Shown here piece after piece: positions 6,264-59,900 of a DNA stretch of 64,000 bases. The stretch is from NCBI GenBank assembly GCA_965235115.1, contig OZ249437.1, forward strand, positions 33,480,001 through 33,544,000. The letters are read 5' to 3'. This DNA comes from Laetmonice hystrix. Taxonomy: Eukaryota. The notes beneath the pieces are model-generated. The model ran no database searches. It was not told where the DNA came from and saw only the letters and a list, made by a program, of their open reading frames with translations. A program made the position numbers and the translations under genes. Position 1 is the first letter of the stretch; every line of letters begins with the position of its first letter.

Positions 6264-6264
<1 letters not shown>

Positions 6265-13660: not shown

Positions 13661-15762
13661 TAAATGGCTCGGGACACATAGGGACCTACCCAGAATTAGT
13701 GCCGCTCCTTAACGTCACCTTCTATGAGTGGGAGGAACAGGGGTCAGTTTCACACCGGTCCTGAAACGGCATCCGAACCCCGTAATCTGACCCTTCAGGC
13801 TCCACCAGGAACCCCCTGACGCTACCTACTGGAGGGGGCTCTTCACACAGGAGGAGGTCACATAGAGCAGGAGATGGGACGCTTTTCTAGGTGTAAAAAC
13901 TTTCATGACTTCCACACATGCTGTAGATAAGGAGAGATTTCTCTATAGACAGGCATCATTTGTTAGAAGTCGATTTATAGCCGGTAGAAAGCCTATAGAG
14001 TGGCATGCCAATAAACAATCGAAGTTTCTCCCCTGTAAAGACTGTGTGCCAGAATACTGGATTCTTAACTTCTTAACGAAATCCACGGTCCATTGCTGGT
14101 AAAATATTGGCTGTGGATTTCGTTAAGTAGTTTTGCTGCGGAATTACGACATAATATATTACGTAGAAGCTATGTGAGTGCCTGATGGTGAAAACTCTTA
14201 TTTAAGCCTTGTGCAACCATTACATGTGGCTAGATTGAGTGGTTAGTCACAAATAATCTCCTTATAGATTATAATACAGACCTTACTTATGAAATTCCAG
14301 AGAAGGAAAGTGGTACTGACGATAACATAAGGTGTTTAGTTGGTATGGGCAGTAAGTTAGCTGTAGGTCTGCAGTCTTGGAGCAGTCCTGAAACCTACCT
14401 TTTAGATATCTATAGATGGAGCAGTTGGAAGGAGTGTTTTCAAAGTTTCCTAGAGCAGAGAAGAAGACTATTTACTTGATTAATCTAGTGCGGATGAAAG
14501 GAGATTTTTGCCTGTGTTACGTTTGTTGGAATACATTGTTCAGTCAGTTCAGTCAAAGTTCGAGGTCAGAGTTCCATTTTTTGACGATATAGGATGCTCA
14601 CGTGTGTGAAGTAGCTGTAATTTTATGGGGTGCCGTTATATTTATGATTTACGTTATTTTTATGACATTTACAGTTCATTCCATTGAAAGGCCACTTTCG
14701 TAACACAGAGGAGGCATACATCCCTTTAAGCAGAGCCATTTATGGTACTTTAGACTTAAATAGTTTGAATGTTTTTGAAGCTGCTGTCCTGATGTTGGAC
14801 TGAGGTTTCTGAATATATCAGAAATATGACAAAATAATGGTGGCAAACAAAATAATTGTAGCAAACGTGTTTCAAACAAAGATTGCAATGTCTGGTTGAG
14901 GCATACTTGGAGCAGTGCAGCTCGCATGTTGGCGACAGTTTTGGTTGGGAATTGGTGACTGCTGTCGTGGTTGGCTGAGGAGAGGTCGACAGGGATCGTC
15001 CTCGGCATTGCGTGCATGTCTAAGTGAACACTGACTGTAGGTGTAGGACTTCCCCTGAGGTTATTAATCTCTGCTCATAACGTCAAGTTTTCTCTGTAGT
15101 TGAGGAAGATACTGGTAGTCTGTGCGATACCAACATGGAGTGAAGATGGGCAGAATTGACTAAGTGTCTATGGGAAGGTTGTGTTTGAAACTTTCGGCAT
15201 GGATCGAGTCTCTGACTTGGTTGGAGGCAGATATCCAGCATACACAAGACGAAAGTGGCGAAGAAGCAAGAAAAAGGTAGGAAGGACAAGGACGGCTGGG
15301 TTTACACTAGGTAACAGCCTTTCTCTAGGTAACAACATCGATGACCGTGAACATACGCTAGACGGTTGGGTCAAATTCCATATTTCAGGTTTATATGAGT
15401 TGAGGGTTACCAAGAGCCACAGTTTTAATACCAGTGTTTCATGTTGATGGCCAGGAGGGAGACTTGTGATAGTTCAGGTGTTGTTACTGACCAATATCTT
15501 GCATTATTGATGATCGCAGTAACCTTAAGAATTGGTCTGACTTTTCCTGGAAGGAGAATCAACCCAAGTTATTCAGGAACGTGATTTCCGTTCCATATAT
15601 CGCACTCCCTTGCTCACCCTCATAACAAGGTGGAGATAAAGCCATAACACCATGCCCTGTCATTTTGTGTGTATTCATGCTAGTCCCGTTGAAACAATTA
15701 AAGCAGAGTTGACAGAAATCATCGCCCTCGATCCTAACGATGTTGTTTTGACTGTGTTGCAG

Positions 15763-15929
15763 ATTTCGGATGTTGTGGTGCCGGGGCAAGCTGAAGACTT
15801 GAGCGCCAAGGAAGCGCTGCTGCTATGGGCGCGGCGCACGGTGGAGGGGTACCCGGGCGTACGGATCCGGGATTTCTCCAACAGCTGGCGGGATGGCAAG
15901 GCTTTCCTCTCCATCATACACCGGCATAG
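15763..15929 (+). CDS. shot: Spectraplakin exon 1 in window: N-terminal half of CH2 domain ([56 protein letters not shown])
   Basis: Acceptor tgtgttgcag at 15753-15762, donor gtaagt at 15930; translation carries the CH2 signature EALLLW...F..SWRDG.AF..IIH of plectin/dystonin/MACF1. Phase 0 in, phase 2 out. Confidence 0.97.
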
Positions 15930-16384
15930 GTAAGTCGGTCTTGTGTTCCTCATACTGCAGTAGGTGTTGGTCCTTCATACACTGTCATAGGTAGGTCGGC
16001 CTTCCGTCCCTCATACTGCAGTAGGTGTTGGACCTTTATACACTGACATATAGGTAGGTCGGCCTTCTGTCCCTCATACTGCAGTAGGTGTTGGTCCTTC
16101 ATAAACTGTCATAGGTAGGTCGGTCTTCTGTCCCTCATACAGCAGTAGGTGTTGGTCCTTCATACACTGTCATAGGTAGGTCGGCCTTCGGTCTCTCATA
16201 CTGCAGTAGGTATTGGTCCTCCATACACCGGCATAGGTAGGTCAGTCTTGTGTCCCTCAAACTGCAGTAGGTGTTTGTCCTTCATACACTGTCATAGGCA
16301 GGTCGGCCTTCTGTCCCCCATACTGCAGTAGGTGTCGGTCCTTCACACACTGACATAGGTAGGTTGGCCTTCTGTCCCTCATAC
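15915..16384. repeat. 61-bp minisatellite, about 7.7 copies, starting inside the exon and spanning the donor site; degenerate copies to about 16550
   Basis: Unit catacactgtcataggtaggtcggccttctgtccctcatactgcagtaggtgttggtcctt; first copy is catacaccggcatag|gtaagt. Confidence 0.95.
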
Positions 16385-19300
16385 GTAAGACTAGAGGGGT
16401 CGGGCCATAAAGCACTTGCGTAGGAACTTTAGCCATCTGTCCCTAAGAGAGAAGAGGGGTTGGTCCTTCTTCAGACACCAGAAGAGGTAGGTTGACCTTC
16501 TGTCCCTCATACAGTGGACTCGAGGAGTTGTCCTTCATACACTGACATTGGTGCGGAAACCGCCTGATACCAACACAGATAGGTAGTAGTGATACTCGAT
16601 TCTCATAACCCCCCTGAAAATGTTCGAAAACCCGACTTGGTTATAGAGTAAGTGTAGCTATGGCTCCTCAGAGGATGATAGAGTACGCATTCTTTGGTGA
16701 TCACCTTGACGCCGGGAGGAGGAGGGGGCGGGTACCTTGGTTGGTATACACGGTACATACGCACACACACACAACTGACACTAATATTATTCATAGCAAA
16801 AGGGGATCGGACTTTGTTGGCGACCGAAGCGGTAGACCTGCAAAGGCCTGGAGCAGTCGTCCGAGGCTCGGATGGTTAAATCACAGCAGTAGATTGTGTA
16901 AACTTTGATATATTGAGCTTTGTCTAAATGGGTTTCTGTCAGAGATGAATGGCACTACGGAGAAGTTGAATATAGGTGATAGCCAGCCAGCAGGTTAATT
17001 TCAACATTCATACATTGGGCACATTATTTCCTAATTTCATGCGAAGCGGATTATTCATTGTATTACAGGTCTTGCATGAAAATGTTCTGTAAATATTTGA
17101 GTATGCGTAACATTCCAGGTTGTTTTCTTGTAACCTGTTGGTAGGTTGTTTAAAAAGTCTACCCTGGGGGTTGAACAAGTAGGCATGAAGTGTTGCAGGA
17201 AACTGTTGTCATCTTAGCCCTCAGTAGATCGGGTCTGGCATCTTGAGAGCACAGCTTGAACTGGGTTTGTTGAATAAGAGTGCTTCAATTCTAGTGTCAA
17301 TGAACAACACAGGGCAAGGTGTCATGATTGCTTATTTATGGCAGATCTTCAAGCGGGTGACCTATGACCTGGGTGACCTGACCTTTAGGGCGAGTGATAA
17401 GGCCGCCCTTCACCCTTGATTGCTGATGTGTGATAACTGTGTTAGTTATTCAGGCTGAGTTCTAGCAGAGGTTGTACAGATAGGCCCTCCATGGTGAAGC
17501 CAGAGAGAGAGAATGTTGGGAACCTGCCGTGATAGTTAGGGAAGGAACCACTCGTAATGCCAAGGCTGGGCTAGGGTCACCGTCCGTCAGGTGTTTGGGG
17601 CCATTATAACTGGCATTTGTTTACATAATTTATCGAGCCGGTGGAATTCATATATCAGCCAGGTAGTTTTTTTCCCGCCTACCCTGGATCGATTATATTT
17701 GAGCAGCTTGCTGTTCGATATGTTGAAACAAGATTCTGTGATGATTAAAGCCGATCACGTCATCATTGATTGATCGTCATGTACGGGGATGGAGGTTTAG
17801 ACTTTAATACCAGATTGTGGGTCGTAGGTCCCATTGTGGTACCTTCAGCTTGAAGTGGGTTCATGAGTGACCCACTAACAGGTAAATTCCATGCAAACCC
17901 AGCCAACCAAGCAATATTGAATCTCGGCAGAGGTCAGTGCAGTCGTAACCTCACCAGGTCACCGCGGTGACGCATACTCCAGAGCCCCCTGGTGACAACA
18001 GTGATAACTAAACCGAAGACCACTCATTTATTGGATCACATAAGTGAGACTGGGTCAGAAATTTTCAGTTTTCACCAGTAAATACTTTCAAGGGGGTGAC
18101 ATTCACAAAATGTAGGGGCTAGCTCTGGAGAATGAGTATTGTGGATTCTCCATGAAGACAGGAGGGCTTCAACTTTTTGATCTCTTGTGCGAGAGACCTA
18201 CAAATATTTTGAATTCTTCAAATGCATTTAGGTAGACTGTGGCTGAGAGAAGACCCTTGAGGGGAGGGGAACCGAAAGTGTAGGGGCGTAGGGCTAACAT
18301 AATATTGATGGACCTGGCATGTAGCTGAGGAGAATGAATGATAATCTTCTCGGCAGGTGGGCAGGGTAAGGGGTAACAAGAGGGGGTATTTGGAAGAGGT
18401 TGGTATCAGGAACTTCCAACCCCAGCGTTTCTCTAGTAGGACCGAGGTCTGAACCCCTATAGGAAAAGACACCTTCAGTCAGAGAAAGCCGACTCGAGAT
18501 CGGCATGAATTATGATTCACCTCAGTCAACCAGTGGTGGGTTTTCAACTATGAGGAGAATGGGGTCATATCGTAACCTTGCAATCTGAGGTTTGTGATCT
18601 CTGAGTGTGGACAAATATTGTTTGTGATCGTGTGTGAGAGAGATGGTTTGAAAGAAAACTGTAGCCTCTGTCGTTACACGGACTTTGGGTTGAGTTTCTT
18701 CCTCGACCTCCCCACCTCCTCCGAACCGTTTTCAGGAGAGGTATGGGAGTGATCGTTCTTACTGTCCAGGTGATCACCTAGTTCTGAGAAGGGCCAAAAG
18801 GCAGGAGGAAAATTATTGCCTTTCAACTGCTGGTGTATAATTATGTGTCAGTGTGCTGTATATCATGGAGATAGAAATTAGAATTGATGACGTCTTAAAG
18901 AATTGAGGACATGCCGGTACAGATTTCTATCCCGTCCTTTTGTTCCACGCCAACCCATGTCTGTGACTACCACATTCCTCAGGCAGTGTGCTGTGTGCCG
19001 GACCGATCGTTCCGTCATTATAGGTGTGCAGGGTTTGTCAGGTGGGGCGGCGCCTACTCCCTCACAACGGGACGCATTGTCCAGCCGGCCGGCTTCTCCC
19101 GTCCCCAGTCGGGGGGGTAATCCCCCCCCCCCTGCTCCCCCCCCCTCCTGACGACCTGTCCTGGCCGTATACTGGCACTGTTTGTGTTTGGGCTGAAGGT
19201 GTTTGCCCCCCTGGTTGACGGCATGTACCCTCACCGTGTCCGGCAAACTACACACCCTACCACCAGGGCCTGGAGACCCTGATCGTGATCAGGGCGACTT

Positions 19301-19971
19301 CTCTCTGTCTGTGTGTCCACAATCAACACTATAGTCTTTCACAGAGTCAGGCCTCAAGTTTGTCCAACCAGATCTGGATCCTTATACGACTAGGGTATTG
19401 TCAGACGACAGTTTAGTTTATCCACGAAGCCAGCACATTCTTGAGTCGAGTATCTGTAGTAGGATGGATACTCCACAGCAAGCGCGTGGATCATAACTGG
19501 ACCCTGTGGGTATGTGCGAGTCCTTTGAGGTCGTTAGAGCGTGGACAATAGCGATTCGAGCCTGTATTTTAATGTTGAGATCTAGGTGTGATAATAAGGT
19601 GTGCACGGTGTAGTGGTCACAGAAACACTTTGTAAGCCTTTCTGTACAGCCGAGTGGATTACCGGCCTGTTGGGGCAATATTTGTGATGCACTCAACACC
19701 TGGTGGCAAGGACAAAGTACAGCTACAAACTGTGCTCCTGGATCAGGGCTAGATCTTACTGTTTCACCAAGTAAGGTTATAACTACTCTGAATGAATACA
19801 AGACGTTCAGTGATACTCGTGTAAAATACCTAAAAACTGGTAAAAATGGTGGTAATATAATTGATGTGGGAATCGAGATTATTGTCCTGCTGAATGTTGC
19901 AGGTGTTATGTGTGTTTATTATTATAAAAGAAGTGGTGTTATAATGAGGGAGTGTTGGTCGGTTTGTACAG

Positions 19972-20087
19972 GCCTGATCTGGTCGACTTCCGTACGGTGT
20001 CCACCCAGACAGCCAAGGAGAACCTCGAGATGGCGTTCAGTATTGCCGAGAAGGAGTACCAAGTCACCAGGCTACTTGACCCGGAAG
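19972..20087 (+). CDS. shot: Spectraplakin exon 2: CH2 (PDLVDFRTVSTQTAKENLEMAFSIAEKEYQVTRLLDPE)
   Basis: tttgtacag acceptor, gtaagt donor; NLE.AF..AE....VTRLLDPED CH2 motif; phase 2 in, phase 1 out. Confidence 0.97.
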
Positions 20088-20771
20088 GTAAGTCCTCATC
20101 TGCTTCCACCGTTCTGAAGAAAATCGGTAGCTGACATTTGCCACTTTGTCTTTACCCTATAAGAATGTATATGGAGAAACGAAATTAATGGGTCGCCCTC
20201 AATATTGACATTTTCTCAGATACGACTGCTGTTACAGTAATCGTATTGCATTATAATGGAATGATTGTCTGTTTGAGACAATAGCTAAAATTCCTCTTTG
20301 ACAGTATAAAGAAATGATGGTACATGTGGAAGGATACAAGAAAATGCTGCGTAGGATAACATATAGGTTGTCAAGTTCTTTCACCTGGACTTCGGTACGT
20401 TTGCTAATGTTTTCGTTTATTGGCGAAAACGATAGTTCAATGGATAGATGTCAAAAGATTATCTCACTGTTCATCAAGATGTAACACGTCTCTCCTTCAA
20501 CCGGTGCAGGCCAATGGTTTGTCATATTTAAAAAATAAGGAAAAAAAGCCTTGGAGAATTGATATCTTTGATGTGGCTCTATCTATATTCTGTCAAGGGT
20601 TCTTCATATTTCGGCTGTAAACACTTGTATTGAAGATTGATGGGCTGATATCATATGTACCTGTTTACACCTTCTGAGGACAGAAAAAACGAATGAGGGG
20701 TTAATTTTACACAGTTCTACAGGACAGACCGAAACTAGGAGACAGATCCCTAGAGGTGGAAAACGAAATAC

Positions 20772-20977
20772 CAGTTACATAACAAACCCATGCAGTTACA
20801 TAACACACCCATGTAGTTACTTAACAAACCCATGTAGTTACTTAACAAACCCATGTAGTTACTTAACAAACCCATGTAGTTACATAGCACACCCATATAC
20901 ATGTAGTTACTTAACAAACCCATGTAGTTACTTAACAAACCCATGTAGTTACATAACAACCCCATGTAGTTACATAA
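20772..20977. repeat. 21-bp minisatellite, about 9-10 copies
   Basis: Unit ccatgtagttacttaacaaac; gives the MGLLSNY repeat in shadow ORF 20750..20965. Confidence 0.95.
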
Positions 20978-21198
20978 AAGAGGCTGCCGGTGTTTTCCCC
21001 AGAGGTTGGGTCATGATGTGGGTATATTTGATGAGTAACGGTGGCCAACAGCTGTCCGTCAGTATTTGGAGCATGAACCCAGAATAGATGCTGCTGTCGT
21101 AGAGTGCAGGCCACAGTCCTCATCTGATACGTGGAGAGAACTCCAGTAGATGTTTACATCAGTACCACCAGGTGGTTACACCGGCCCCGGACATGGCC

Positions 21199-21214
21199 TG
21201 CCCCCTGGCGGCAG
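21199..21214 (-). promoter_or_regulatory. CTCF-like motif CCGCCAGGGGGCA
   Basis: Reverse complement of tgccccctggcggcag; similar cores at 17983-17996 and 22926-22940. Motif match only. Confidence 0.35.
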
Positions 21215-21723
21215 ACGGGCTCGTGTTACTGGAGACTGTGGCCGGCAGAGGGTGCTGGAGTCAGTGATCTCTGCTCTCTGTGTGTTGACATCCGGTGACA
21301 TCATTTAGATCAGGTATCCCGTGTGTGGGCGGGGAGGTTTATCCTACTTTGCGCCCACAAAAATGGATACAACAATTTGTCGTCAGTTTTTATTTTTATT
21401 TTCATTGCTTTCCTTTTATTTTTATTTTCATTGCTCAGGTAGTCCATTTTAAATCCCAAAAGCTAGTAGAAAACGTGAGGCCTCCCCCAGTTTTTGAAAA
21501 CTTAAATTCTTGCTGAAATGTAAGCTTGACGCTTGCAGGTGAGCTTATCAGAAGATGCTTAAGCTTAAGAATGAACTTAAGTTTTGAAAATCCGGACCTG
21601 CAGACCAACCAATCAGAAGGCATAAGCATGAGCAAGGACTTATTTGTTGAAAACTGTCGCTGTAAAGGAGATGTTAATGCCAAGTGGTAGCGTAGGACTG
21701 ATAATGAGTGCGGTTTGTTTCAG

Positions 21724-21830
21724 ATGTGGACGTCCACCAGCCAGACGAGAAGTCTCTCATTACGTATATTTCCTCCCTTTACGATGTGTTCCCTGAAGTC
21801 CCCACCATGGAACAATCCGTCCGTGACAAT
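21724..21830 (+). CDS. shot: Spectraplakin exon 3: end of CH2 ([36 protein letters not shown])
   Basis: ttgtttcag acceptor, gtaagc donor; DVD...PDEKS.ITY.SSLYD.FP motif; phase 1 in, phase 0 out. Confidence 0.97.
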
Positions 21831-25274: not shown

Positions 25275-26174
25275 GACGTAAAGTTGTACGCGGCCAGCTC
25301 AGAGCGGTCGTGTACATGCTTGCCCTGTGAGGAGTTGCTGTAAGATCATTAGTAATCAGCTGTGTTCGTCCAACAGTTCGAATGGATGTCACACAGGGTC
25401 TCTAGACCGTCACATTGTGGACATAACGACACTCAAATACAGGTCATACACATGCAAGGCCCGCTTGTATGTGGGACTTGCCAAGAAACGTGAATTGCTT
25501 AACAACGAGTTCTAGATCTTCTACAACTGAAAGCGACCAAAAGTTCTGCCCTTGAGATCGTCGGTTGTAACACTAGACAGGGCTTTGTGGAATTTGTATA
25601 CACCGACAGGATACGGCGAAACCCGAGGTGCACACCTCCACAAATCTCTTCAAGTGGTCTCTGCATCCTCCCCCACTCCCGACCACCACCAAGACCTTGG
25701 CCAGTGTCTCCAGGAGTGTTGGTTGGCGTGACCCCTTGAGTCATATCAGACAATCGTGGTGCCCTTGCTGAGGTCACAAATCTCTTTCCTGTAAATAAAC
25801 TTCACACAGACAAAGGATTGTCTGCCTTTGCCCTCAGTAACGACTGACACCAAGTTCAACGCTACAGGATACACGACACCATCCCTAGAAATATTTGTTT
25901 AGAGGAAGAAGGGGGAAAAAACCCTCGTAAACTGGAGGAAATACAAATCATAGCGTACATACTGACCTGGAAATAAAACTGTTTGAAAGCGGTGTACTGC
26001 TTTAATCCAGTTGGAGTCAAAGAAGTTTTGAATACCGTTTTTGTGAAGTATATTGAGCGAACTATCATCCTTGGTGTTGTGAAGTATTTCAGTGTAGATT
26101 GCAGTGTCCCGCCCGCAGTCATGGAGGTCCATGTGACCAATTATAAACTGGGCAAGGTGTTTGTGTTGTTGCAG

Positions 26175-26294
26175 GAGCGACAGCTCAAATGGGAGGAATA
26201 CCGTGAGCTGGCTTCAAGTCTTCTTGTCTGGCTGCGGGAAGCCACCTCGCTCATGCAAGACAGGAATTTCCCCTCAAACCTCATAGAAATGAAG
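26175..26294 (+). CDS. shot: Spectraplakin exon 4: first spectrin repeat (ERQLKWEEYRELASSLLVWLREATSLMQDRNFPSNLIEMK)
   Basis: gtgttgttgcag acceptor, gtacgt donor, 120 nt, phase 0/0; W.EY......LL.W.R......+.R.FP motif of plakins. Confidence 0.95.
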
Positions 26295-29929: not shown

Positions 29930-31507
29930 CAGTTGTGAAAACATTCAAGTATTTCTCGATAAAAAGCTTATTTTATTACCCATAGTAATCGTTTGTTTCA
30001 TGGGCCATATGCTATATATACACACATAAAGCGTGCACTAAATGTTTTTCAAGTCAATGGGAGAGGGGGGAAAGCGGTGGAGATAGGCTAAGTGAGTGTC
30101 AGGCCTTCTTTCAGTAAGGTCCACGATGTGTCGGGGCAGTGGGGCGGCAGAAGATCAAAGACAATCTGTCCTTTGATGTCGGTGGATCCCGGCTGTCCGG
30201 AACACGCTGTCCTGTCCGTGGAGGCTGGCAGGGTACCATGTAACATACCGGTACATGTGTGTCAGTATGGTTAATGTTGGTGCATTGGGACGGCTCCCCA
30301 GCCTTGCCGACCCTGGTCTCCCTGTCACACCTCAGCCGCCGCCCGCCGGGCTGCGTGCCGTGTCCCGCCGACGTGACGGCGTGCTGTTCATGTCGTCAAG
30401 TATTTCTGATGTTTGGGGGATAGATAGATGGAGGTCATAGATGACTGCACTCGCTCGGGGTCACGGCTAGGGTCAATAGAATAATACCCAGTTTGTCTAA
30501 AAGCAAGCCCCATACCTTTGCACATGATCAGAATGCGGCTACATGTGGCCCATTTTACGGACTGGGCCTGTATCCGTCAAATTGTCGTTCAGTAGGTAAG
30601 CCACTCAAATGAACAGCTGTTGTAAAAGTCTCAGATTTGGAACGGTTCAAGAAGTTTTACAGGAGCTGGTGTAAAGTTTCTCTTAGGGGAATGTTTTAAT
30701 ATTTGATGCAAACATAATTCGAAAACTGGACACCGACTTGCTGTGTTTGTAGACTCGAATCATGGTTTGAATACTGTAAATTTCTTTTATTTTGATTCTT
30801 TGTAATTTTCATGAATGTAAGGAATTCGGTGTTGTTTCAGCTGCATTATTTCGCAGTTTCCATTATTTTTAAGCAGGCGTGAGAATGATAGCTGGCAAGC
30901 TTAACATGTATTCTCAAGATCATCAGTGGAAAGTCCATGTTTTGGAAGCAAAAGACAGTGAAAGATTCTCAGTTTTGATCCCTTCAATGACATACCACAT
31001 TCAGGACAGTACCCTTTCAGGGGGCAAGTGTGTGACCAGACTGGGAAGTGCTAGCAACTCCAAACTTAAACTTGAAGATATAATGCAGTAAGAGAAAACT
31101 ATCTTCGCTGTGTTTTAAAAAAGTACGGTTGCTGAAGACATGACCTGAATAACGAGGAACGAATGGATGTTATTCGACATGTTGTAGACTGAGAAACGTA
31201 GATTTGATTCATTCTATAATCATGTATGATCTGTAAAGATATGCCTCAGATGCATGGGGCCGGTAAAAATTTAGTAGGTGATGCAGAAAGAGTTTGGCGG
31301 TTGTGGAAGAAAAAAAATCACCAGGCCTACAGGTGGCTCATCGCTTGGCGGTTGTTTGTGGAAGAGGAGTCAGTGGAGTGAAATCAATGTTGGACCCAGC
31401 AGTGATTCAAACTAACTTAACTACATGTTGTCGCGGCCATTCGTTATGGCCACGGGTGAATAAATGGCCCCAGGTTTTAACGGTGGTGTCTTTTGATGTC
31501 TTTGCAG

Positions 31508-31603
31508 ACGGCTTTATCTGAGTTCAACAGGTTTCGAGTGGAGGAGATCCCTCCAAGGCTCAGAGAGCAGCAGAGGCTCGGACAACTTTTTGATGAGCTA
31601 CAG
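31508..31603 (+). CDS. shot: Spectraplakin exon 5 (TALSEFNRFRVEEIPPRLREQQRLGQLFDELQ)
   Basis: tttgcag acceptor, gtgagt donor, 96 nt, phase 0/0; F+.EEIPP+ helix matches the plakin region following exon 4. Confidence 0.92.
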
Positions 31604-35018: not shown

Positions 35019-36491
35019 GAAAGTTTATAAAGAAAAACGTCTAGCTGGCTCGTAATAATACGTGAAGATAGGACCTATTGTATTCTATTATTCCTAAATC
35101 ATGTAAGACTGGTACATCTCATACGATAGAAAACTGCTGAGATACCCACAATATTGACCATGTAGGTCAGCCCTCCACCTTGAAAAGTGTTAAGACAAGG
35201 GACAGGTAGAGTAAATAACCTGACTAGGCCACGTGCTTGTACTGGTTTACCGTTGATTTGTATGCAAACATTTTGGTGGATATAGTGCTGGCCCCGGCTC
35301 TGACAGAATGATAGCCAGCTCAAGTAGGCTTATACACTGAATTCAAATGGGAAACCTGAACGGTTGAGACCACCAGGGCCTTTGTTCTAACCAGGACTTG
35401 GGATTTACGTTCGTCAAGGATGTTTTCAACATGTTCAAAGAGTTGTAGGACGTTCACCCGGTTGGGGACTGGGGAGAGCGCGCGGGTCAGCGCCGTTGTA
35501 CAATTACTCGTACACTGTCCCCGTGTGATTTGACACTTTGGGTTATATGGGACTCCGCCATATAATATATTGAAACGTCCGTTTCGGAGCTCTCCGTCAC
35601 ATGGAAATAACATGTGTTTACCGCTGACATTCGGCAGGAGATATTGCAACATGAAACCTGTGGTTGACTCTCAAGTTTGGATGATTTAATCATTGAACCG
35701 CACGAGGTGCTAGCCGACAAATGTATGCCTAATTTCTATTATCTCCAGGAAAAATCGAAGCAGCCTGCTGTTTACTGTGCATTATACTGGGAATCGACCG
35801 TGAAGTAAGAAGATGGACAATATTTTGAGTAGCAAGGGATGACCACGTCTATCTCCAGTCATTAAGCCAGGCGGGTCAGTCAGTGAGCGGAGAAATGATT
35901 GCGTAATCCAGAACCACAGGGAGCTGCCTTATGTTGTATGTGTGGTGGTCAGTCAGGGTGCCGTCAGGTGATATATAGGACACATATTGAGAACGATCCA
36001 GTACCTTATAGATTTTGTGTGTGTATGTAGGCCGATATTATACTCTGATCATCCATGTAGACTTGGAGCATCAGACCAGCTGTTAGCAGATGATCTGCTG
36101 GACTCGATCTGTGGACTCGCCAGGGTTCAGCACGTGAAACGCCGACACTTCGAAGTGATACTTGACTAATTGATCAAAGTGAAGTCGGTTACAGGTTATA
36201 GATTGAAGACACCGCCCAACCAGGACAGAGAAAAGAGTTCACCTCGCAATCTATTGGTCAGCGATAAGGAGTAGAGGCTGACATGTGAAATTATTTAACA
36301 TGCAGGTGACGGCAGCACTGTGTGTCAAGTCGTCTAGTCATGCAGACGTGGCTTCATGATAACTGACCACTGACTTGTGTCGTCGTCTGGTTTTGTTGAG
36401 AGACAGTCGAGTCGTAATGTAGCGGGTAGGGACGTAATGACAATGATACAAACCTGATCACTAGGATTTACACCCCCTACTGTCACTCACC

Positions 36492-36704
36492 ATGGAGGAT
36501 GGGTCGTGGTGGTGGGGTGGGGAGAACGTGGAGCAGGCAGGGACTGCCACTGGAGAAGTCGAGTACATGGACCTCCAGTACGGCTGTATGGAGGTGTATG
36601 TACTGGAGATGATGGGGCTGGATGTGTTTATGGAGTGGCCGTATGTGGCTGTGCCCTTTGTACTGGTCATCGGTGTACTCGTCGTTCTGGTCCTGTTTCT
36701 GCGG
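36492..36704 (+). CDS. shot: Candidate alternative first coding exon: 71 aa, acidic N-tail plus single transmembrane helix (YVAVPFVLVIGVLVVLVLFL-R), splicing to plakin exon 6
   Basis: Strong Kozak caccATGG after in-frame TAG (36462-36464); 213 nt open; consensus donor CGG|gtaagt in phase 0, matching the phase 0 acceptor at 40291; 20 consecutive uncharged, mostly hydrophobic residues; GC-box-like (accgccc) and inverted CCAAT (ctattgg) motifs 240-280 nt upstream. Confidence 0.7.
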
Positions 36705-37266
36705 GTAAGTTTGTTAGACCTGAGGGCACTGGCGGATCGGGGGGGGGGAGGGACTGGGGCCAACAGATGTACTTGGTTGATCCAAGACGTTGACGTCCAG
36801 AGACAATAAGAATGGTGATTGATAACTGTGAGCAGTGGCGGATCCAGGGGGATAAGGAACCCACCCACCCATTGGCAACCGTTTTTTTTTTTTTTGCCCA
36901 CAGTCGATATAGCACTTTACGAATTGATAATGCCCAAGCAACTTCTTCCCCTAAACCAACCTGGCGAGATGTTATAAAAATGTTCAGATTTGGGTGCATT
37001 ATCATATTTAATATTATAGTTAATCTAAGGAATTGGATATAGAAGCATTAGGTTACATTACCCTGAACCCAGCTTCAACCACATCGCCACTGTAAATAGT
37101 CCGACTCGGGTTAAATGAAATAAAATGTTCCAGTGAAGATGGCCAATACTTGCAACCAGTTACATCTTCCGTCCAGATTAACCAGATTGGAGAAAAGGCT
37201 AAGACAGTAACGATTAAATTAAGCCGCTGGTGACATGTAGTGGACATTATATCACCTTGATATTAA

Positions 37267-37706
37267 AGGCAGGGTAAACACCCACGGCAAATAAGGTTTC
37301 ATAGACCAAATAAAACACCAGCATTTACCTCAGGGCAATAAATGCCACAATTACGTTGTCTGAATGAAGTAATTAACGTGTAACCGCCCGATGTATGACG
37401 CCGCTGGTTCTTACCTTGGCTTCTTGTGTGTTCATCAAAGCCGAATGCTGTACACCGCGGCGTATTGCGTAACATTACGTGCAACTCTGCTCACAGACCT
37501 TGTCTACACGATGTTTGAAATCCCAACGTTTGTAAACGTCCGAGGTGTTGAATACCCAAGCAGAACCAGTTGCGTCACACATCGGGCAGTTACACGTTAA
37601 TTACTCCATTTATACAGCGTAATTGCGGCATTTATTGCCCTGAGGTAAATGCTGGTGTTTCATTTGGTCTATGAAACCTTATTTGCCGTGGGTGTTTACC
37701 CTGCCT
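37267..37706. mobile_element. 440-bp MITE with ~145-bp near-perfect TIRs, TTAA target site and AGG...CCT termini (Kolobok-like)
   Basis: TTAA|aggcagggtaaacacccacggcaaataaggtttcatagacc... mirrored by ...ggtctatgaaaccttatttgccgtgggtgtttaccctgcct|TTAA. Confidence 0.93.
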
Positions 37707-40290: not shown

Positions 40291-40421
40291 GAGTTGTCGG
40301 CCAACCGGGGTCAGTTTTCGATTGAGGAACAACTCCACATGGATAACATTAGTCGGCAGTGGGACCGTTTGACTCTGGTTCAGCAGGAGAAAGATATGTC
40401 ACTTCAGGCGGAACTCTCACG
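40291..40421 (+). CDS. shot: Spectraplakin exon 6 (ELSANRGQFSIEEQLHMDNISRQWDRLTLVQQEKDMSLQAELS-R)
   Basis: atttttgcag acceptor, gtacgt donor; phase 0 in, phase 2 out, continuing into LERLQRLA. Confidence 0.93.
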
Positions 40422-46230: not shown

Positions 46231-46380
46231 GTAATCCTCTTACTATACCTGCTCATCACAAGTCGAGTGATGGGAATTCAGGTCATCAATGATTAAAATC
46301 GGAACAATACACATTGTGACATTCATATGTCATATTATATGTTTGATATTGCGGTGACATTGATGGTGATTTGGCTACAG

Positions 46381-53731: not shown

Positions 53732-53929
53732 GTGAGTATTTAAGAAACAACACACACTCGATTCTTTGCAACTTCATTTTGAAACATATTGCAGGTAATT
53801 TCCTATTGATCCAGAAAATGAGTTGATTACATTATGCAAAAAAAAGTTATATTCAATGATTAGAGTAGGACCTGAAATGGATTAACATAAGTGACTCTTC
53901 TGATATTAAGTAATGTTGCTCTGTTTCAG

Positions 53930-56900
53930 TATGCTGTTGAAGATGTTATTCCCCGCATTCGCACTTTCCGCTCTGAGCTGCGCATGTTGGATGACGACGA
54001 CCAGATTGACTGGTCTGGTATTCAGCTGATGTCCCCCACTGAATCCGGACTCAGTCCTTCGTCCAGCTTCCAGAGCAAGGTTGTCATCACCACAACAGGC
54101 CAGATGCATCAAACACAGGCTGATGCTGCATCGCGCATCATCCAGATTTCACGCCGTAGCTCCCAGCCGGACATGGACCAGGAAGCGGATATGTATACCC
54201 CAAGTACCCCGACGGAAAGCTTCCAGTCCATCAGTGTTACAAGCACCCCGAGCAAGAAGCCGACAACACCTACAAAGCCGGTGCCAAATATTACAAGTAT
54301 TTCTGTAGTGAGCAAAGGGAAGGATGTAGACTCTCGAGCTGAACACATTCCAAGACAAACTGTGCAGTCTGTGATAACAGTGACATCAAGCACCACCGTG
54401 CCCAGGGGCCAGGTGGTATTTACAGCTGCTGTCTTGAACCCCAAGACAGGCCGAAAGCTTTCACTTGAACAAGCCATCGAAAGTGGATTAATAGACATCA
54501 GATCAGGCTTCTTCTTTGATATGAGATCAAACCAGAAACTGTCGCTAGCAGAAGCAGCAAGATTAGGGTTTATTGACAAAGACTTAATGAAACAGCTGCA
54601 ACAAAAGTGTGGCATGCGCGACCCGGCAGCTAATAGGGAACTCTCAATTCTTGAAGCCATGCAAAAGGGTTACTATGACCCAATAACAGGACAAGTTACA
54701 GATCCTCAAAGTATGCAGAGAATGACCTTAGAGCAGGCGGCAGCACGGCACATGATGTCACCAGAAGCAGTGCAGACCCTGTCATATGTGAGCATCCAGA
54801 CCTCGGCCAAGTCCAGGTCTGAGGCTTTCTATGGCATCCCGAGCATGGAGAGCACTCCCGTCATCCTGGCGCTTGCTGATGCCCTTGACAAGGGTTTGTA
54901 CATTCCAGAGAGCGGTTACATTTTGGAGCCCATATCTCGTGAGATGATCACACTTCAGCAAGCCATTCAGAGGCGTCTGATTAATGCTAACTTACGTGAG
55001 ATTGTTCACCCGGTGACTGGGGAGAAACTAACTCTCCAGGAAGCCATCCTCCAGGACATCATCAACCAGAAGACTGGAATGTTTGTGGATCCACGTTCTC
55101 GGAGGCAGGTCTCGCTCACTGAGGCCCAACAGAGAGGACTCATCCAGAGGCCAATGTCCCTACACACAGTACTCACGGAGGGTATCATGGATGAGGCTGG
55201 CAAGTTCAAAGACCAACACACTGGAAGGAAGATGGTTCTCGGGGAGGCCCTGGAGAAGGGGGTTCTCGACTTAGACTTCTGCTGCATCCTTGACCCAAAT
55301 ACTCAGGAGCTTCTGTCCCTCCAAGGGGCCATGGATCGGGGGCTGGTCAGTCCACAAGGTCACTTCATAGAACCAAGATCTGGACGGCACCTCTCCTTCC
55401 ACCATGCTATCAACCAAGGACTTGCTCAGATTTGCAGTGAGGAGGTGAACTTCCCACAGCGAGGCATCCGTAATACTGGCACAGGCGAACTGCTGACGCT
55501 TTCAGAAGCCATCAACCAAGGGTCCATTGAACCGAACACTGCCATGTTTGTTGACAAAAATAGTGGACGGAGGATGTCCATTGAGGAAGCAGTACGTCAT
55601 GGACTGGTCGATCCGGAGTTGGCCAATCAGCTGTCCTCAGACTCCGGTATGAGGGACATTGTAGGCAGCAAACTCAGTATTCACGAGGCCCTCAAACGTG
55701 GACTGCTGGATCCTGTGACTGGAGAAGTAAAGGAGCCAACAACCGGGCAGACCATGACCATAGAGGATGCAGTCAGGTCAGGGCTGTTGAGACCAGAGGA
55801 GGGCTGCAAGCTGTTGTGCCTGACCAGCACTGTGATGAAGACACAGGCCATTATGACTCAGATCAAGCCGTCTGTCGCAAGGGAGAAGCCTATCCGTGCC
55901 ATTTCTGTTGGTGAAGCTGTGATGCAGGGCCTCATTGATGAGGAACACGGATTGTTCCAACTGCCAGGCACAGCACAGCCAATGGCACTAAACCAGGCCA
56001 TCGAACAGGGTTACATACTCTCATCATCTGAATGGGACGACGACACAATATCATCAGTGAGCACTCACCCAAGTCAACAAGGCACCCTGATACCTGTTAC
56101 TCAGGGCAGCATTGCTGCCATTCCCCCAGAGGAACATGTGAGCATGCAAGAGTCCGACCAATATGTGCGGGACATTGAGGGTGGCAAAGAAGAAGTATCA
56201 TGGTCAGAAAGAAAAGATTTCCATGCCCTGAAAACTGAGGCCGGTATCCAGGCTCTCTCCACACAAGAGGCAAAGATGTCGCAGGTGAAAACTACCTCCC
56301 ATACTGACTACACTGGGGATGTTAGCTTCCCCATCTCCATCAAGACAGCAATTGCTATGAAACTTCTGGATACTCAGAATGGCTTGTTCCGGGACCCTAC
56401 AACTGGTGAGCAGATGACCCTTGAGCAGGCAATAGACCGAGGGTTGCTGACTTCAGAACTAGCCTTCTTCATCCACCCAGTCAGTGAAAGAAAGTTCCCT
56501 CTGAGTGAAGCAATTGCAAAACTCATTCTTGATGAAACAGGACACTTCACTGACCCGCGCACACACACCACAATGACTCTTGAAGAACTTCTAAATCTGA
56601 ATATTGTCGTCTTAGAAACAAGACCAAAGGAGGAGTCTCGTGTCAGGGAAAGGACGAGGATGACTGTCCGGTCGGTCCTGGACCCCCGTACTGGAGAGTG
56701 GCTGGACCCAGAACGTGCGAGCAGGAGGAAGCTCCTGGATATGACCCGTGGAGCCTACACCCATCCAGTGTCCGCTGACGTCTTGACCATTCAGGAAGCT
56801 GTTGATGCAGGGTACATCAAGGCTGATGCTGACACATCTGGAGCATACACCACAACACAGGGCTTCATGGAGACTCGAAGCTACAACATCACAGAGGCTG

Positions 56901-59900
56901 TCGACCCAACCACTGGCCATCTGGTGGACATTGCCACAGCTTTAAGGGACGGCATTGTAGACCAGGCGAACGGAATGTACATTGGGAAGGATGGATTTGG
57001 CAAAGTCCAGAAGCTGCCAATCTCTGAGGCCATCAGACGAGGATTGGTGGTGGAAACTTCTGCAGAGATTTCTGTGTCTGAAATTGATGCAGGTCCGAAA
57101 TATGTTCAGGAGACACAAGCATGTACCATTCGTGCAGTCGTAGATCCTACAACACAGCAACAAGTGTCTGTAACAGAGGCCATCAAGAAGGGAGTTCTCA
57201 ACCAAGGCACTGGAAAATATGTCAATCCAATCACTGGTAAGAGCATGCTTATCACAGATGCCATCGAGCAAGGGTTCATAATAGGAACAGTGGAAACGAC
57301 CGCATCGACTACTGACACCATGGAAGACAACAAGATACTTGCTTCTCGCCAGACAACATACACCCTGAAGTCAGTCCGTCATCCTGTCACTGGCATGGAG
57401 ATCTCTGTCAACGAGGCCATTGATCTGAGAGTACTGGACAAGGAAAAGGGAGTGTACACGAACACCCTCACTGGGGAGGTATTCCCACTGAGTGACGCTA
57501 TTGACAAAGGCTTTGTGACAGTCGAAATTGGAGGCCAGGAAGAAGTTGAAGATGAAGATGAAGAGCGTGTACCTAGCATCCACATCGATGATGATCTTGA
57601 TGCTCAAGAAGAGATGACAACAGAAGAAGTGACTGAGGTCACTAAGAGATTCCAGATCACAGGAGTTACTGATGTGGCGTCAGATAATGTCCTGACATTG
57701 GACGAAGCTTTGAAGCAGGGTGTCGTCAACGAGGACAAGGGTGTATTCTACAACACGTCCACACGGATGTCTATCCCGATCCCCGAGGCCCTCAATAGGG
57801 GACTCATTGTCGGTCGTCTCGTTGAATCCAGTGAAGAACATGAGCTCTTCAGAAGTGATGTCGTTGCAAGTCGGTCCAAGGATGGGGACATTGTGTCTGT
57901 GATAAATCCTATTTCTGGTCTTGCAATATCAGCCACCCAGGCCATGCAACTGGGGCTTCTGAGTCAGGATAAGAAAACGTACTATGATCCATCAACGGAC
58001 AAGAGAATACCAGTGGAAGCAGCCATTGAACGAGGCTTGGTGAATCCCTCTGAAGGTGCAAAGAAAAGAGCCCAGGGACCTCAGAGAACAGACCTTGATC
58101 TTGGACTCGATGACTATGACTTTGGTCCAACAAAACCAAAGATGGTTATTGACTGGAACAATGGACTTGTCCGTGATGGACGCACTGGTGAAGAAATCGC
58201 CTTGAATGAAGCAGTGAGAGAGGGTTTCATAGACCAACAAACTGCAGATCTTCTGAGCAGAAAATCCGAAACGATGCCATTCCGAGGGTTGACCCGGCCT
58301 CATGAAGCACACGAGATAACCATACGAAGGGAAGGGGAGCAAAGGACCTCAGAACAGGTGAGGGTCATAAGTTCAGAAGACACCACAACTGGCACAGATG
58401 ATACTATCACGCTGACGATTCAGAAGACCAGGTTGGTAGAACCAGAGATCAAAGCTGTCAGAATTGATGAACAAATGGATGTGAGCACGGGACCAGAGGA
58501 ACCTGGAAAACTGTCGTACACAGAGGCTGTCAAGCTGGGGCTGTTGGACATGTGGTCAGGCCATTTTACGGATCCTGCCACTGGGAGGTCAATGACCCTG
58601 CAAGAAGCCATCAACAGGGGACTTATCGATCCTAAGAGTCCAGCCATCGTCGACATGAAGACTGGTCGCACAATCACTCTACATGATGCTCTTGTCAAGA
58701 CCCTTATCAGCTCCTACAATGGCCGAATCAATGAAGCTAAAGTCAAAGAAATGGGAATCACTCTTGATCCCCAGTTTATGAGGGACGAGTCTCGACTCTC
58801 TCCTGTGAACTTTGAAGACGCCATTCTCAGTGGACTTCTTGACCTTGACAGTGGTCTCTTCAGACACCCCAAGACAGGACAGCAAATGACTCTTGGGCAA
58901 GCTGTTGCTCAGAACGTGCTCAACAAGGATACAACGGTTGTCGTCTGTCCAAACTCAGGAGAGAAGGTGACTATTGAAAAGGCCCTTAAAGATGGCATCG
59001 TTGACGGCCAGACTGGAGACTTTATTGATACACAGACCAAGAAGAGACTACTCACACTGAAGGGTGCCGTCAACTCAGGGCTCCTGGAGTCTTCCATCAC
59101 GGCAGACTCAGAGCTGGTCATGGACTGGAAACGTGAAGTCAAAATCCCATTGGCACAAGCCATTGCTGAGGGCATAGTTGATGAGACTGCTCCAAGTGTC
59201 TACGATCCTTCAAGACAAAGGAGAGTATCGCTGGAAGAGGCAAAGCAGCGTGGACTTGTAAACCCGCGCACGGGAGAGTATGTGGATCCAACTTCAGGCA
59301 AAAAAGTAACTGCAAAGGATGCAGCAAAACTCGGTTTGCTGGCAGTCGTTGGTGCCCCAGTCCTTGCTGGACTTGCTGCTGCAGAGGGTGTACGTAGACT
59401 TACCCAAACAATGAGGGAGAAGATGGAGAAATCTGATACATCAGCAAGGTTGGAAGAGAAGGTATTTATTCCCAAGGGCCAGGAGCACAGGCCTCTACCC
59501 ATCACTTCTGCCTTGGAGGATCGTCCTTCTTTGTTGCCAACTGAGCACGCAACCAGGGAAGCTCATGGTGCAAGAGCTGTGGACGTGTCATCTGAAGTGC
59601 ATCCTGTGCAGATTGAGGTCAAAGACGGACATTTCAAGGCCTCTCAAAAATTCACAACAAAGACAGAATCAAAACAAGTCAAGGAAGTTATAAAACATGG
59701 CCAGAAAACGGCTGCCATTCAAGGACCTGAGCAAGGCAGAATCCAAATGGAGCCCTCGCCTGCAATTACCGAGTACCACAGAGCTGAGCCCGAGGAGCCT
59801 GAGTCGGTCGTCAGCATGGCCAAGGTAGCTGTGAGACCGCAGCCCACGGGAGAATCTCGGATGCCCTATGATGTTGATATCAGTGTGCAACCCAAGCCAG

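What the first reader, a model, noticed from the sequence alone, without database searches (positions are those of the whole stretch)
36492..36704. Intronic exon giving the spectraplakin an N-terminal transmembrane anchor in place of its actin-binding domain
Seen: caccATGG, 71 open codons, 11 acidic and no basic residues before a 20-aa hydrophobic helix (nt 36642-36701), then Arg, then a consensus phase 0 donor. The next acceptor (40291) is phase 0. Established: an acidic N-side with basic C-side predicts a type III signal anchor (short luminal N-tail, cytosolic C-terminus). Vertebrate dystonin-a2 has an N-terminal TM segment but keeps CH1-CH2. Inference: an integral-membrane plakin lacking both CH domains and the first spectrin repeat, directly tethering the plakin/plectin-repeat (and possibly downstream microtubule-binding) region to ER, nuclear envelope or plasma membrane. 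I know of no described equivalent. Alternative reading: a weak in-frame acceptor (cactag| at 36464) would make it a 240-nt cassette exon.
Basis: partly seen in the sequence, partly recalled or inferred. Interest (0 to 1): 0.85.

Follow-up and report, generated by a model that had tools for sequence, protein, structure and literature searches.

The report
Conserved membrane-anchor start exon in spectraplakin
Inside an intron of a giant cytoskeletal linker gene lies a small exon, kept in a related species, that would start a version of the protein with a membrane-spanning anchor in place of its actin-binding head; no transcript has yet been seen.

Summary
Window 36492-36704 (+) is caccATGG plus 71 open codons: 11 acidic and no basic residues, then a 19-20 residue hydrophobic stretch, Arg, then a G|GTAAGT donor in phase 0. 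It is single-copy in its genome. It lies in the 8.7-kb intron between spectraplakin exons 31493-31603 and 40291-40421, downstream of the CH2 exons and upstream of a plectin-repeat exon longer than 10 kb.

The main new result is conservation. In one related species, the orthologous 7.4-kb intron shares a single significant block with the window, and that block is this exon. It has the same caccATGGAGGA start, 70 codons, an EWPY motif, 20 hydrophobic residues and a phase-0 GT donor. Similarity starts 7 nt before the ATG and the open-frame match ends at the donor. In the relative only this frame is open. Codon usage scores like real exons in both species.

I read it as a real, fast-evolving coding exon. 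It is most likely an alternative first exon giving an isoform without the actin-binding domain and with an N-terminal membrane anchor.

Not shown: any transcript, the 36704|40291 junction, or membrane insertion. The one RNA-like run has no contig on the exon.

Each ingredient is known elsewhere: the dystonin-a2 transmembrane lead, the plectin-1b mitochondrial anchor, and BPAG1e, MACF1c and Shot-D, which lack the actin-binding domain. I found no description of the combination.

The parts
36462..36464 (+). In-frame TAG, 30 nt upstream of the ATG.
   Evidence: The relative has an in-frame TAG 18 nt upstream of its ATG.
36485..36491 (+). Start-codon context (..ctcacc). Cross-species similarity begins here.
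   Evidence: The blastn block starts at 36485. caccATGGAGGA is identical in both species.
36492..36704 (+). Candidate alternative first coding exon, 71 codons.
   Evidence: single copy; conserved in the relative at L004:11165-11374; codon-usage score like real exons.
36492..36632 (+). Acidic N-terminal part, codons 1-47. It has no Lys/Arg and holds a conserved Y-x-C-x-E...LE..GL block.
   Evidence: Residues 1-50: 11 acidic and 0 basic in the window, 10 acidic and 0 basic in the relative.
36633..36644 (+). EWPY motif, identical in both species, directly before the hydrophobic stretch.
36645..36701 (+). Hydrophobic 19-mer VAVPFVLVIGVLVVLVLFL, the predicted transmembrane helix.
   Evidence: Kyte-Doolittle 19-mer mean 3.29 in the window and 1.97 in the relative. 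Codon-position identity is 0.40/0.55/0.25, second position best kept.
36705..36710 (+). Splice donor GTAAGT, phase 0, directly after Arg71.
   Evidence: The relative has GTGTGT at the same codon distance, 20 residues after EWPY.
40291..40421 (+). Next spectraplakin exon (ELSANRGQFSIEEQL...), with a phase-0 acceptor ttttgcag|. It is the inferred splice partner.
   Evidence: Its donor at 40421 is confirmed by the X4 joint 40421|40844. Weak match to the last helix of alpha-actinin spectrin repeats.
31493..31603 (+). Upstream constitutive plakin-domain exon (start approximate), donor CAG|GTGAGT, phase 0. The candidate lies in the intron that follows it.
26160..26294 (+). Exon after CH2, at the start of the plakin domain (start approximate). 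The proposed isoform would skip it.
15757..21809 (+). Three CH2-domain exons (about 15757-15930, 19949-20086, 21723-21809). The proposed isoform would skip them. No CH1 match was found in the window.
   Evidence: Pfam CH hit at window 15802-15930; tblastn map.
53891..64000 (+). Giant plectin-repeat exon. The frame is open to the end of the window.

Best explanation
Window 36492-36704 is a real, conserved, fast-evolving protein-coding exon of the spectraplakin gene. It is most likely an alternative first coding exon driven by an internal promoter in the intron between exons 31493-31603 and 40291-40421.

Proposed mechanism:
1. Translation starts at the caccATGG.
2. The phase-0 donor at 36704 joins the phase-0 acceptor at 40291.
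3. The product has a basic-residue-free acidic stretch of about 50 residues, a single hydrophobic helix of 19-20 residues, and then almost at once the last helix of the first plakin-domain spectrin repeat and the rest of the protein.
4. Both CH domains and about the first 80 residues of the plakin domain are missing.
5. The hydrophobic helix would act as a signal anchor recognised co-translationally. The short acidic N-tail would go to the lumen or outside, and the giant C-terminal part would stay cytosolic. The plakin and downstream modules would then be tethered directly to a membrane, without actin binding.

Shown: the sequence features, single-copy status, position in the gene, conservation of ORF, start, motif, length and donor in a second species, and exon-like codon usage.

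Inferred: transcription, the splice partner, membrane insertion and topology, which membrane, and which downstream modules the isoform carries.
For: - Gene context. The CH2 exons, plakin-domain exons and plectin-repeat exon were mapped. The candidate lies between exons that are adjacent in homologues (spider protein residues 166-204 and 213-246), so it is not a constitutive exon.
- Only conserved block in the intron. The orthologous introns are 8681 nt and 7379 nt. The one significant alignment is window 36485-36649 against L004 11158-11320 (E 7e-5). Every other hit has E of 1.4 or more. The positions are collinear, 3.7 and 3.3 kb upstream of the ELSAN acceptor.
- Matching anatomy in the relative. 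It has caccATGGAGGA, 70 codons, EWPY, 20 hydrophobic residues and |GTGTGT in phase 0, with the next exon also starting ELSAN. The net length difference is one codon.
- Frame-specific signals. Only this frame is open out of 6 in the relative. The peptide alignment score of 59 is reached by 0 of 2000 segment-wise shuffles, and by 4 of 2000 when EWPY is held fixed.
- Coding-type substitution pattern. In the hydrophobic part, codon position 2 is best kept and position 3 least (0.55 against 0.25).
- Exon-like codon usage. The log-odds are +0.14 bits per codon in the window and +0.34 in the relative in frame 0, and lower in frames 1 and 2. Known exons score 0.18-0.45. None of 3000 random intron windows reaches these values in either species.
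- Conservation stops at the donor. The read-through tails are unrelated, and an in-frame stop lies 30 nt (window) and 18 nt (relative) upstream of the ATG.
- Polymorphism keeps the frame. The four haplotype differences in the exon are two synonymous, M26L and D27E (table 3, codons read).
- Not a repeat or known domain. It is single-copy in its genome. There is no Pfam hit, and the protein search returned only two bacterial repeat proteins.
- Precedent. Spectraplakins use several promoters and lead sequences, including isoforms without CH domains and a transmembrane lead in dystonin-a2. Plectin 1b's first exon anchors it in the mitochondrial outer membrane (PMC3352950, 10.1101/122010, PMC3279385, PMC8468861).
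Against: - No transcript evidence. No run on record as RNA holds the exon. X4 behaves as RNA: it covers exons only and shows GT..AG joints. It has zero depth over 36400-36799, while its contig on the downstream exons has depth 23. That contig stops at 40385, so the 5' partner of 40291 is unknown.
- Conservation rests on a single relative. Five other relatives could not be reached.
- The exon is weakly conserved: 29% amino-acid identity against 70-93% for neighbouring exons. It also carries 4 polymorphic sites in 213 nt.
- No conserved promoter sequence lies upstream.
- The relative's donor GTGTGT is weaker, and its hydrophobic stretch is only moderately hydrophobic (1.97).
- No basic residue follows the hydrophobic stretch in the relative, so the positive-inside signal is not conserved.
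- The protein search of 1.84 billion representatives found no predicted protein that starts like this.
Confidence: 0.6

Rival explanations
1. It is a separate small gene nested in the intron on the same strand. The unspliced ORF (36492-36806, 105 codons; 101 in the relative) would encode a single-pass or tail-anchored microprotein of about 100 residues, with a conserved acidic cytosolic head, a transmembrane helix and a short variable tail. The GT after the helix would be coincidental.
For: - The conserved part is ATG, acidic region and hydrophobic helix. Tail-anchored proteins often have unconserved short tails after the helix.
- In both species the read-through frame stays open for about 30 more codons.
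- No spliced read supports use of the donor.
Against: - A GT donor sits at exactly the same codon distance (20 residues after EWPY) in both species. In the window it is the full consensus G|GTAAGT.
- The donor phase matches the next spectraplakin exon in both species.
- No conserved polyadenylation signal or other conserved block lies downstream in the intron.
- X4 shows no unspliced transcript either.
- Alternative first exons are the rule in this gene family (10.1101/122010).
Confidence: 0.12
2. It is a conserved non-coding element, such as an intronic regulatory element or non-coding RNA exon, or an untranscribed relic. The open frame would be a by-product of its G-rich, A-poor composition.
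For: - Four of 6 frames are open in the window over this stretch. Composition is 40% G and 12-16% A in both species.
- Nucleotide identity is only about 61%.
- No RNA support. Polymorphism is not reduced in the exon.
Against: - In the relative only the candidate frame is open.
- Start, length (one-codon difference), motif and donor coincide.
- Codon usage is exon-like in frame 0 only. None of 3000 intron windows reaches it in either species.
- Second codon positions are best conserved.
- Letter shuffles keep the frame open in only 5% (window) and 17% (relative) of trials.
Confidence: 0.13
3. It is a coding cassette exon of 240 nt (36465-36704), spliced between exons 31603 and 40291. This would insert a hydrophobic segment into an isoform that keeps the CH domains.
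For: In the window the frame is open from 36465, right after 'cactag', and both flanking junctions are phase 0.
Against: - The acceptor has no pyrimidine tract; the upstream sequence is gtaatgacaatgatacaaacctgatcactag.
- In the relative the in-frame TAG lies 18 nt before the ATG. The only nearby AG is 8 nt upstream and out of frame, running into TGA within 15 codons (sequence).
- Similarity begins only 7 nt before the ATG.
Confidence: 0.03
4. It is a real alternative first exon of the spectraplakin, but the hydrophobic stretch is not a bilayer-spanning type III anchor. It might be a monotopic or hairpin insertion, an organelle-surface targeting signal like the mitochondrial signal of plectin 1b, or a hydrophobic interaction helix.
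For: - The relative's stretch is Leu/Gly/Tyr-rich with moderate hydrophobicity (1.97) and has no flanking basic residues.
- The Met-Glu N-terminus is the kind usually acetylated in the cytosol (my own knowledge).
- Plectin 1b's short lead targets the mitochondrial outer membrane (PMC8468861).
Against: - The window's stretch (3.29 over 19 residues) is as hydrophobic as classical transmembrane helices.
- Its length of 19-20 residues is conserved.
- The complete lack of Lys/Arg on the N-side in both species fits N-terminal translocation.
Confidence: 0.12

Closest known systems
Dystonin-a2 / BPAG1a2 N-terminal transmembrane lead (vertebrates)
   Same: An isoform-specific 5' exon of a spectraplakin gene encodes a hydrophobic transmembrane segment. 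It places the protein on ER and perinuclear membranes (PMC3352950, PMC3279385).
   Different: - The vertebrate lead precedes CH1-CH2, so the actin-binding domain is kept. Here the exon lies downstream of the CH2 exons.
- No sequence similarity was detected.
- The lead here has a long acidic N-tail without any basic residue.
- The vertebrate transmembrane assignment itself has been disputed (10.1101/122010).
Plectin isoform 1b
   Same: One of a dozen alternative first exons of a plakin gene. Its 37-residue lead targets and anchors the protein in a membrane, the mitochondrial outer membrane (PMC8468861).
   Different: Plectin 1b keeps the actin-binding domain, has a short lead and uses another membrane. 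Homology was neither tested nor found.
Isoforms without the actin-binding domain: BPAG1e, MACF1c, Shot D-type
   Same: They start from internal promoters downstream of the CH exons and lack both CH domains (PMC3352950, 10.1101/122010). BPAG1e couples a plakin domain to plakin repeats, as this gene could.
   Different: None is described with a transmembrane lead. The start here also removes about the first 80 residues of the plakin domain.
Type III (N-exo) signal-anchor proteins
   Same: No cleavable signal peptide, one hydrophobic helix, an acidic N-side free of basic residues, and a large cytosolic C-terminal part (established topology rules, my own knowledge).
   Different: The N-tail of about 50 residues is long for this class. 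The positive charge after the helix is present in the window (Arg71, Arg77) but not in the relative.

Membership tests
Spectraplakin gene (shot / vab-10 / MACF1 / dystonin) | Calponin-homology actin-binding domain exons | tested here: met
   Pfam CH hit at window 15802-15930. Three CH2 exons were mapped by tblastn. No CH1 match was found in the window.
Spectraplakin gene (shot / vab-10 / MACF1 / dystonin) | Plakin domain (spectrin-like repeats with an SH3) followed by plectin repeats | tested here: met
   About 17 exons between 26160 and 50018 align in order to the plakin domains of insect and spider plectin/dystonin. The giant exon has Plectin repeats at E 1e-116 and 1e-125.
Spectraplakin gene (shot / vab-10 / MACF1 / dystonin) | Spectrin-repeat rod, EF hands and GAR microtubule-binding domain | not tested
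   These would lie beyond the end of the window.
Alternative first coding exon (isoform-specific lead sequence) | Own start codon closed upstream by an in-frame stop, and a donor in phase with the next common exon | tested here: met
   TAG lies 30 nt (window) and 18 nt (relative) upstream. Donor and acceptor are phase 0 in both species.
Alternative first coding exon (isoform-specific lead sequence) | Conserved as coding sequence in relatives | tested here: met
   One relative only.
Alternative first coding exon (isoform-specific lead sequence) | Transcript with a 5' end here and a junction to the common exon | tested here: inconclusive
   No run on record as RNA holds the exon. The RNA-like run X4 has no contig on it, and its contig ends at 40385, short of the acceptor. 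Contigs cannot show absence.
Dystonin-a2-type transmembrane isoform | Hydrophobic segment of transmembrane length in the isoform-specific lead | tested here: met
   Kyte-Doolittle 19-mer mean of 3.29 and 1.97.
Dystonin-a2-type transmembrane isoform | Lead is spliced in front of CH1-CH2, so the actin-binding domain is retained | tested here: not met
   The exon lies 14.7 kb downstream of the last CH2 exon and after two plakin-domain exons.
Dystonin-a2-type transmembrane isoform | Sequence homology to the vertebrate lead | tested here: not met
   phmmer against 1.84 billion representatives returned only two bacterial repeat proteins. A very diverged relationship cannot be excluded.
Isoform without the actin-binding domain (D-type, BPAG1e, MACF1c) | Start downstream of all CH exons | tested here: met
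   Position in the exon map. This holds only if the exon is used as a first exon.
Type III signal-anchor membrane protein | More positive charge on the C-side than on the N-side of the hydrophobic helix | tested here: inconclusive
   The window fits: the N-flank has 3 acidic residues and the C-flank has Arg71 and Arg77. In the relative both flanks are acidic (sequences).
Type III signal-anchor membrane protein | Integral membrane insertion with the N-terminus outside | not testable with these tools
   Needs biochemistry.

The most novel reading that the evidence does not exclude
An invertebrate spectraplakin makes an integral-membrane isoform with no actin-binding domain. A conserved internal first exon supplies an acidic luminal or extracellular tail and a transmembrane helix fused almost directly to the plakin domain. 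The giant linker, through its plectin repeats and possibly its microtubule-binding end, would then be bolted to a membrane (ER, nuclear envelope or plasma membrane) rather than recruited through actin or adaptor proteins.
Probability: 0.45. Interest if true: 0.7.

Novelty: new variant of a known kind. Interest (0 to 1): 0.58.

Why it matters
Spectraplakins are thought to reach membranes indirectly, through actin, integrin tails, collagen XVII or adaptor proteins. The one proposed transmembrane isoform, dystonin-a2, has been disputed.

A second, independently evolved lead that is conserved between species and replaces the actin-binding domain would show two things. Direct membrane anchoring would be a recurrent solution in this family. 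And it could work without actin binding.

It also gives a compact, testable targeting module of about 70 residues. More practically, it shows that an unannotated isoform start in a huge gene can be recognised from cross-species intron comparison alone.

Tried and rejected
- RNA evidence. Two run searches found no run on record as RNA. X4 turned out to behave as RNA but gives no cover on the exon. Its contig also ends before the 40291 acceptor, so it neither confirms nor refutes.
- Protein homologues. phmmer against 1.84 billion representatives gave only two bacterial repeat proteins, which are spurious. Pfam gave nothing. The ESM Atlas gave nothing above chance level. No paralogue exists in the same genome; the one weak hit, on contig C19, contains stops.
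- More relatives. The loci of P0002 and P0006 came back without DNA. The P0005 contig ends at the equivalent of window 42676. By my estimate the P0007 contig ends about 3 kb short of the candidate's expected place. The P0004 species is AT-rich with larger introns and has no called ORFs to walk along. A search with the neighbouring exon ORF found only the two species already known.
- Homologue N-termini. None of the spectraplakin homologues with a recognisable plakin domain that I fetched shows a hydrophobic lead.
- TE or repeat origin: rejected, since the exon is single-copy.
- Antisense gene: rejected, since all minus frames carry stops in the relative.
- Cassette-exon reading: rejected as a conserved function.

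Full report
**1. The observation**

The sequence is as described. caccATGG starts at 36488. There are 71 open codons at 36492-36704, reading MEDGSWWWGGENVEQAGTATGEVEYMDLQYGCMEVYVLEMMGLDVFMEWPYVAVPFVLVIGVLVVLVLFLR. Residues 1-50 hold 11 acidic and no basic residues. The best 19-residue Kyte-Doolittle mean is 3.29, at residues 52-70. Arg71 follows, and then CGG|GTAAGT.

The nearest in-frame upstream stop is the TAG at 36462-36464. The next exon starts at 40291 behind ttttgcag, in phase 0, and reads ELSANRGQFSIEEQL.

An open frame of this size is not remarkable on its own. The window has hundreds of open frames of 70 or more codons, and 4 of the 6 frames are open over this stretch. The full combination is rarer: ATG, at least 50 codons, a terminal hydrophobic 19-mer, then a GTRNGT donor. 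It occurs once on the two strands of the window, apart from one trivial position inside the giant exon. The stretch is single-copy in the 627-Mb genome and has no paralogue there.

**2. Gene context**

The window carries a spectraplakin gene on the + strand. A Pfam CH match lies at window 15802-15930. tblastn with insect and spider plectin/dystonin proteins maps these exons:
- three CH2 exons at about 15757-15930, 19949-20086 and 21723-21809;
- two exons at the start of the plakin domain, 26160-26294 and 31493-31603;
- a dense series of plakin-domain exons from 40291 to about 50018.

The open frame from 53891 to the end of the window is plectin repeats, with Pfam E of 1e-116 and 1e-125.

The candidate lies in the 8.7-kb intron between 31603 and 40291. 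In the spider homologue the two flanking exons are contiguous (residues 166-204 and 213-246). The candidate is therefore not a missed constitutive exon. Exon 40291-40421 weakly resembles the last helix of alpha-actinin spectrin repeats (E 0.08). An isoform starting at the candidate would thus drop both CH domains and the first two helices of the first plakin repeat. That last step is an inference.

**3. Transcript evidence**

No run on record as RNA holds either the candidate or the giant exon. Laying the four runs of the one available sample on 36000-41999 showed that X1-X3 cover everything and are DNA. X4 covers only exons and carries GT..AG joints at 40421|40844 and 40937|41545, so it behaves as RNA. 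These joints confirm two predicted junctions.

X4 has zero depth over 36400-36799. Its 1201-nt contig, at depth 23, ends at 40385, which is 94 nt short of the acceptor. The run therefore does not show which 5' exon is joined to 40291. These are assembled contigs, which drop rare isoforms. I take this as weak evidence against abundant use in that sample, not as refutation.

The X3 haplotype differs from the reference at four sites inside the exon: 36567, 36572, 36578 and 36584. In the candidate frame these are M26L, D27E and two synonymous changes. The frame is kept, but polymorphism is not reduced compared with the surrounding intron.

**4. Conservation, the decisive result**

A search with the giant exon gave a relative with 67% identity, P0001 (ENA ERZ25767047). 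I walked its contig upstream in two further steps. In locus L004 the exon equivalent to 31517-31603 lies at 7122-7208, and the ELSAN exon starts at 14597. The neighbouring real exons are 70-93% identical at the protein level and 72-83% at the DNA level.

The two orthologous introns are 8681 and 7379 nt. Compared directly, they share exactly one significant block: window 36485-36649 against L004 11158-11320 (E 7e-5). All other hits have E of 1.4 or more. The block is collinear, 3.7 and 3.3 kb upstream of the acceptor.

The relative's sequence reads caccATGGAGGAG..., with 70 open codons: MEELGCPEGALVSLVLGLTLEEGVEEHCYCPLELTGLEAVGLGSLLEWPYWGLPLGLLGLLLWLLYLYLM. A GTGTGT donor follows.

Features shared by the two species:
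- an identical 12-nt start context;
- no Lys or Arg in the lead before the donor (the window's only one is the terminal Arg71), with 10-11 acidic residues before the helix;
- a Y-x-C-x-E...LE..GL....EWPY block;
- exactly 20 mostly hydrophobic residues from EWPY to the donor;
- a phase-0 donor;
- a net length difference of one codon;
- an in-frame stop shortly upstream, at 30 and 18 nt.

Evidence that the conservation is coding and frame-specific:
- In the relative only this frame is free of stops. The other five frames have 1-5 stops.
- The peptide alignment score is reached by 0 of 2000 shuffles that keep the composition of the acidic and hydrophobic parts, and by 4 of 2000 when EWPY is also held fixed.
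- With the two sequences anchored at the donor, 20 of 70 residues are identical. In the hydrophobic part, codon-position identity is 0.40, 0.55 and 0.25. Second positions, which set hydrophobicity, are best kept, and third positions least.
- A codon-usage log-odds score was trained on each species' own giant exon against its own intron. It gives +0.14 and +0.34 bits per codon in the candidate frame and lower values in the other two frames. Known small exons score 0.18-0.45. None of 3000 random intron windows reaches the candidate's value in either species.
- The amino-acid correspondence (same length, hydrophobic character) holds up to the donor. The read-through tails are unrelated.

Together these results argue strongly for a coding exon with a functional start and a functional donor. 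They argue against a chance ORF, a non-coding conserved element or a TE fragment.

**5. First exon, cassette or nested gene**

The cassette reading works only in the window. There the frame is open from 36465, but the acceptor has no pyrimidine tract. In the relative the in-frame TAG lies between any upstream acceptor and the ATG. The only nearby AG, 8 nt upstream, is out of frame and runs into a TGA. The cassette use is therefore not conserved.

A nested small gene cannot be excluded without RNA. It would be an unspliced ORF of 105 codons (101 in the relative) encoding a tail-anchored microprotein. Three points make an alternative first exon more likely. The donor sits at the same codon in both species, and in the window it is the full consensus. 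Its phase matches the next spectraplakin exon in both species. No other conserved block lies in the intron. Donors of the bona fide exons of this gene are themselves variable (GTACGT, GTCAGT, GTACAG, GTAATT and others), so the relative's GTGTGT is within range.

**6. How it would work (inferred)**

A promoter in the intron would give a transcript that starts shortly upstream of 36492. Translation would begin at the conserved caccATGG. The hydrophobic helix would emerge after about 70 residues and be recognised co-translationally. The C-terminal part has thousands of residues and must stay cytosolic, and the N-side has no basic residue. The expected topology is therefore N-terminus out and C-terminus in the cytosol, a type III signal anchor.

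The helix is followed within about 14 residues by a spectrin-repeat helix. The plakin domain would then be held close to the membrane.

Topology is less certain than coding status. In the relative no basic residue follows the helix, and its hydrophobicity is moderate (1.97). Which membrane is involved, and whether the isoform carries the plectin repeats or the microtubule-binding end, cannot be told from the sequence.

**7. Comparison with what is known**

Spectraplakins use several promoters. These give leads combined with CH1+CH2, with CH2 only, or with no CH domain (D-type; BPAG1e; MACF1c) (10.1101/122010, PMC3352950). Dystonin-a2 carries an N-terminal transmembrane domain that places it on ER and perinuclear membranes (PMC3352950, PMC3279385), although this has been disputed (10.1101/122010). 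The 37-residue lead of plectin 1b anchors it in the mitochondrial outer membrane (PMC8468861). Both of those isoforms keep the actin-binding domain.

The present lead has no detectable similarity to anything in 1.84 billion representative proteins, Pfam or the ESM Atlas. None of the spectraplakin homologues with a recognisable plakin domain that I fetched shows a hydrophobic lead. It therefore works like the dystonin-a2 and plectin-1b anchors but is not a member of either. It is best filed as a new variant: a start without the actin-binding domain combined with a transmembrane lead.

**8. Verdict**

- That this is a conserved coding exon: about 0.85.
- That it is an alternative first exon of the spectraplakin spliced to 40291: about 0.65.
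- That it forms a true membrane anchor: about 0.5.
- The full best explanation: 0.6.

Interest is moderate to high for cytoskeleton specialists. It is limited by the lack of any transcript and by conservation shown in only one relative.

Noticed in passing
window 37260-37712: A very high-copy repeat. Summed DNA contig depth is 60,000-300,000, against about 30-80 for the flanks. There are many loose ends at 37261-37263 and 37710-37713, and the repeat is also present in the RNA-like run X4. It lies in the same intron, 0.6 kb downstream of the candidate exon.
   Followed up: no
window 40385-41709: Run X4 behaves as RNA although it is not on record as such. It covers exons only and shows joints 40421|40844 and 40937|41545, which confirm two predicted spectraplakin junctions.
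   Followed up: partly
window 6230-6466 (+): An open frame with a run of about 19 glutamines (GPDTYWRQQQQQ...), upstream of the mapped CH2 exons. It could be a simple CAG repeat or part of an N-terminal lead exon.
   Followed up: no
L007:2319-2523 and neighbouring exons: In the species behind P0005, several plakin-domain introns present in the window are absent or very short. The equivalents of 45466-45570 and 45732-45830 abut, and so do those of 46105-46227 and 46375-46536. This suggests intron loss in that lineage.
   Followed up: no
L002:22058-31913 and L005:23190-29339: In the relatives a second giant open frame follows the plectin-repeat exon directly (more than 7223 and more than 2543 residues, running off the loci).
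   Followed up: no
window 1-15700: No CH1-domain match was found in the window upstream of the CH2 exons. The CH1 exons and the usual first exons probably lie further upstream, outside the window.
   Followed up: no
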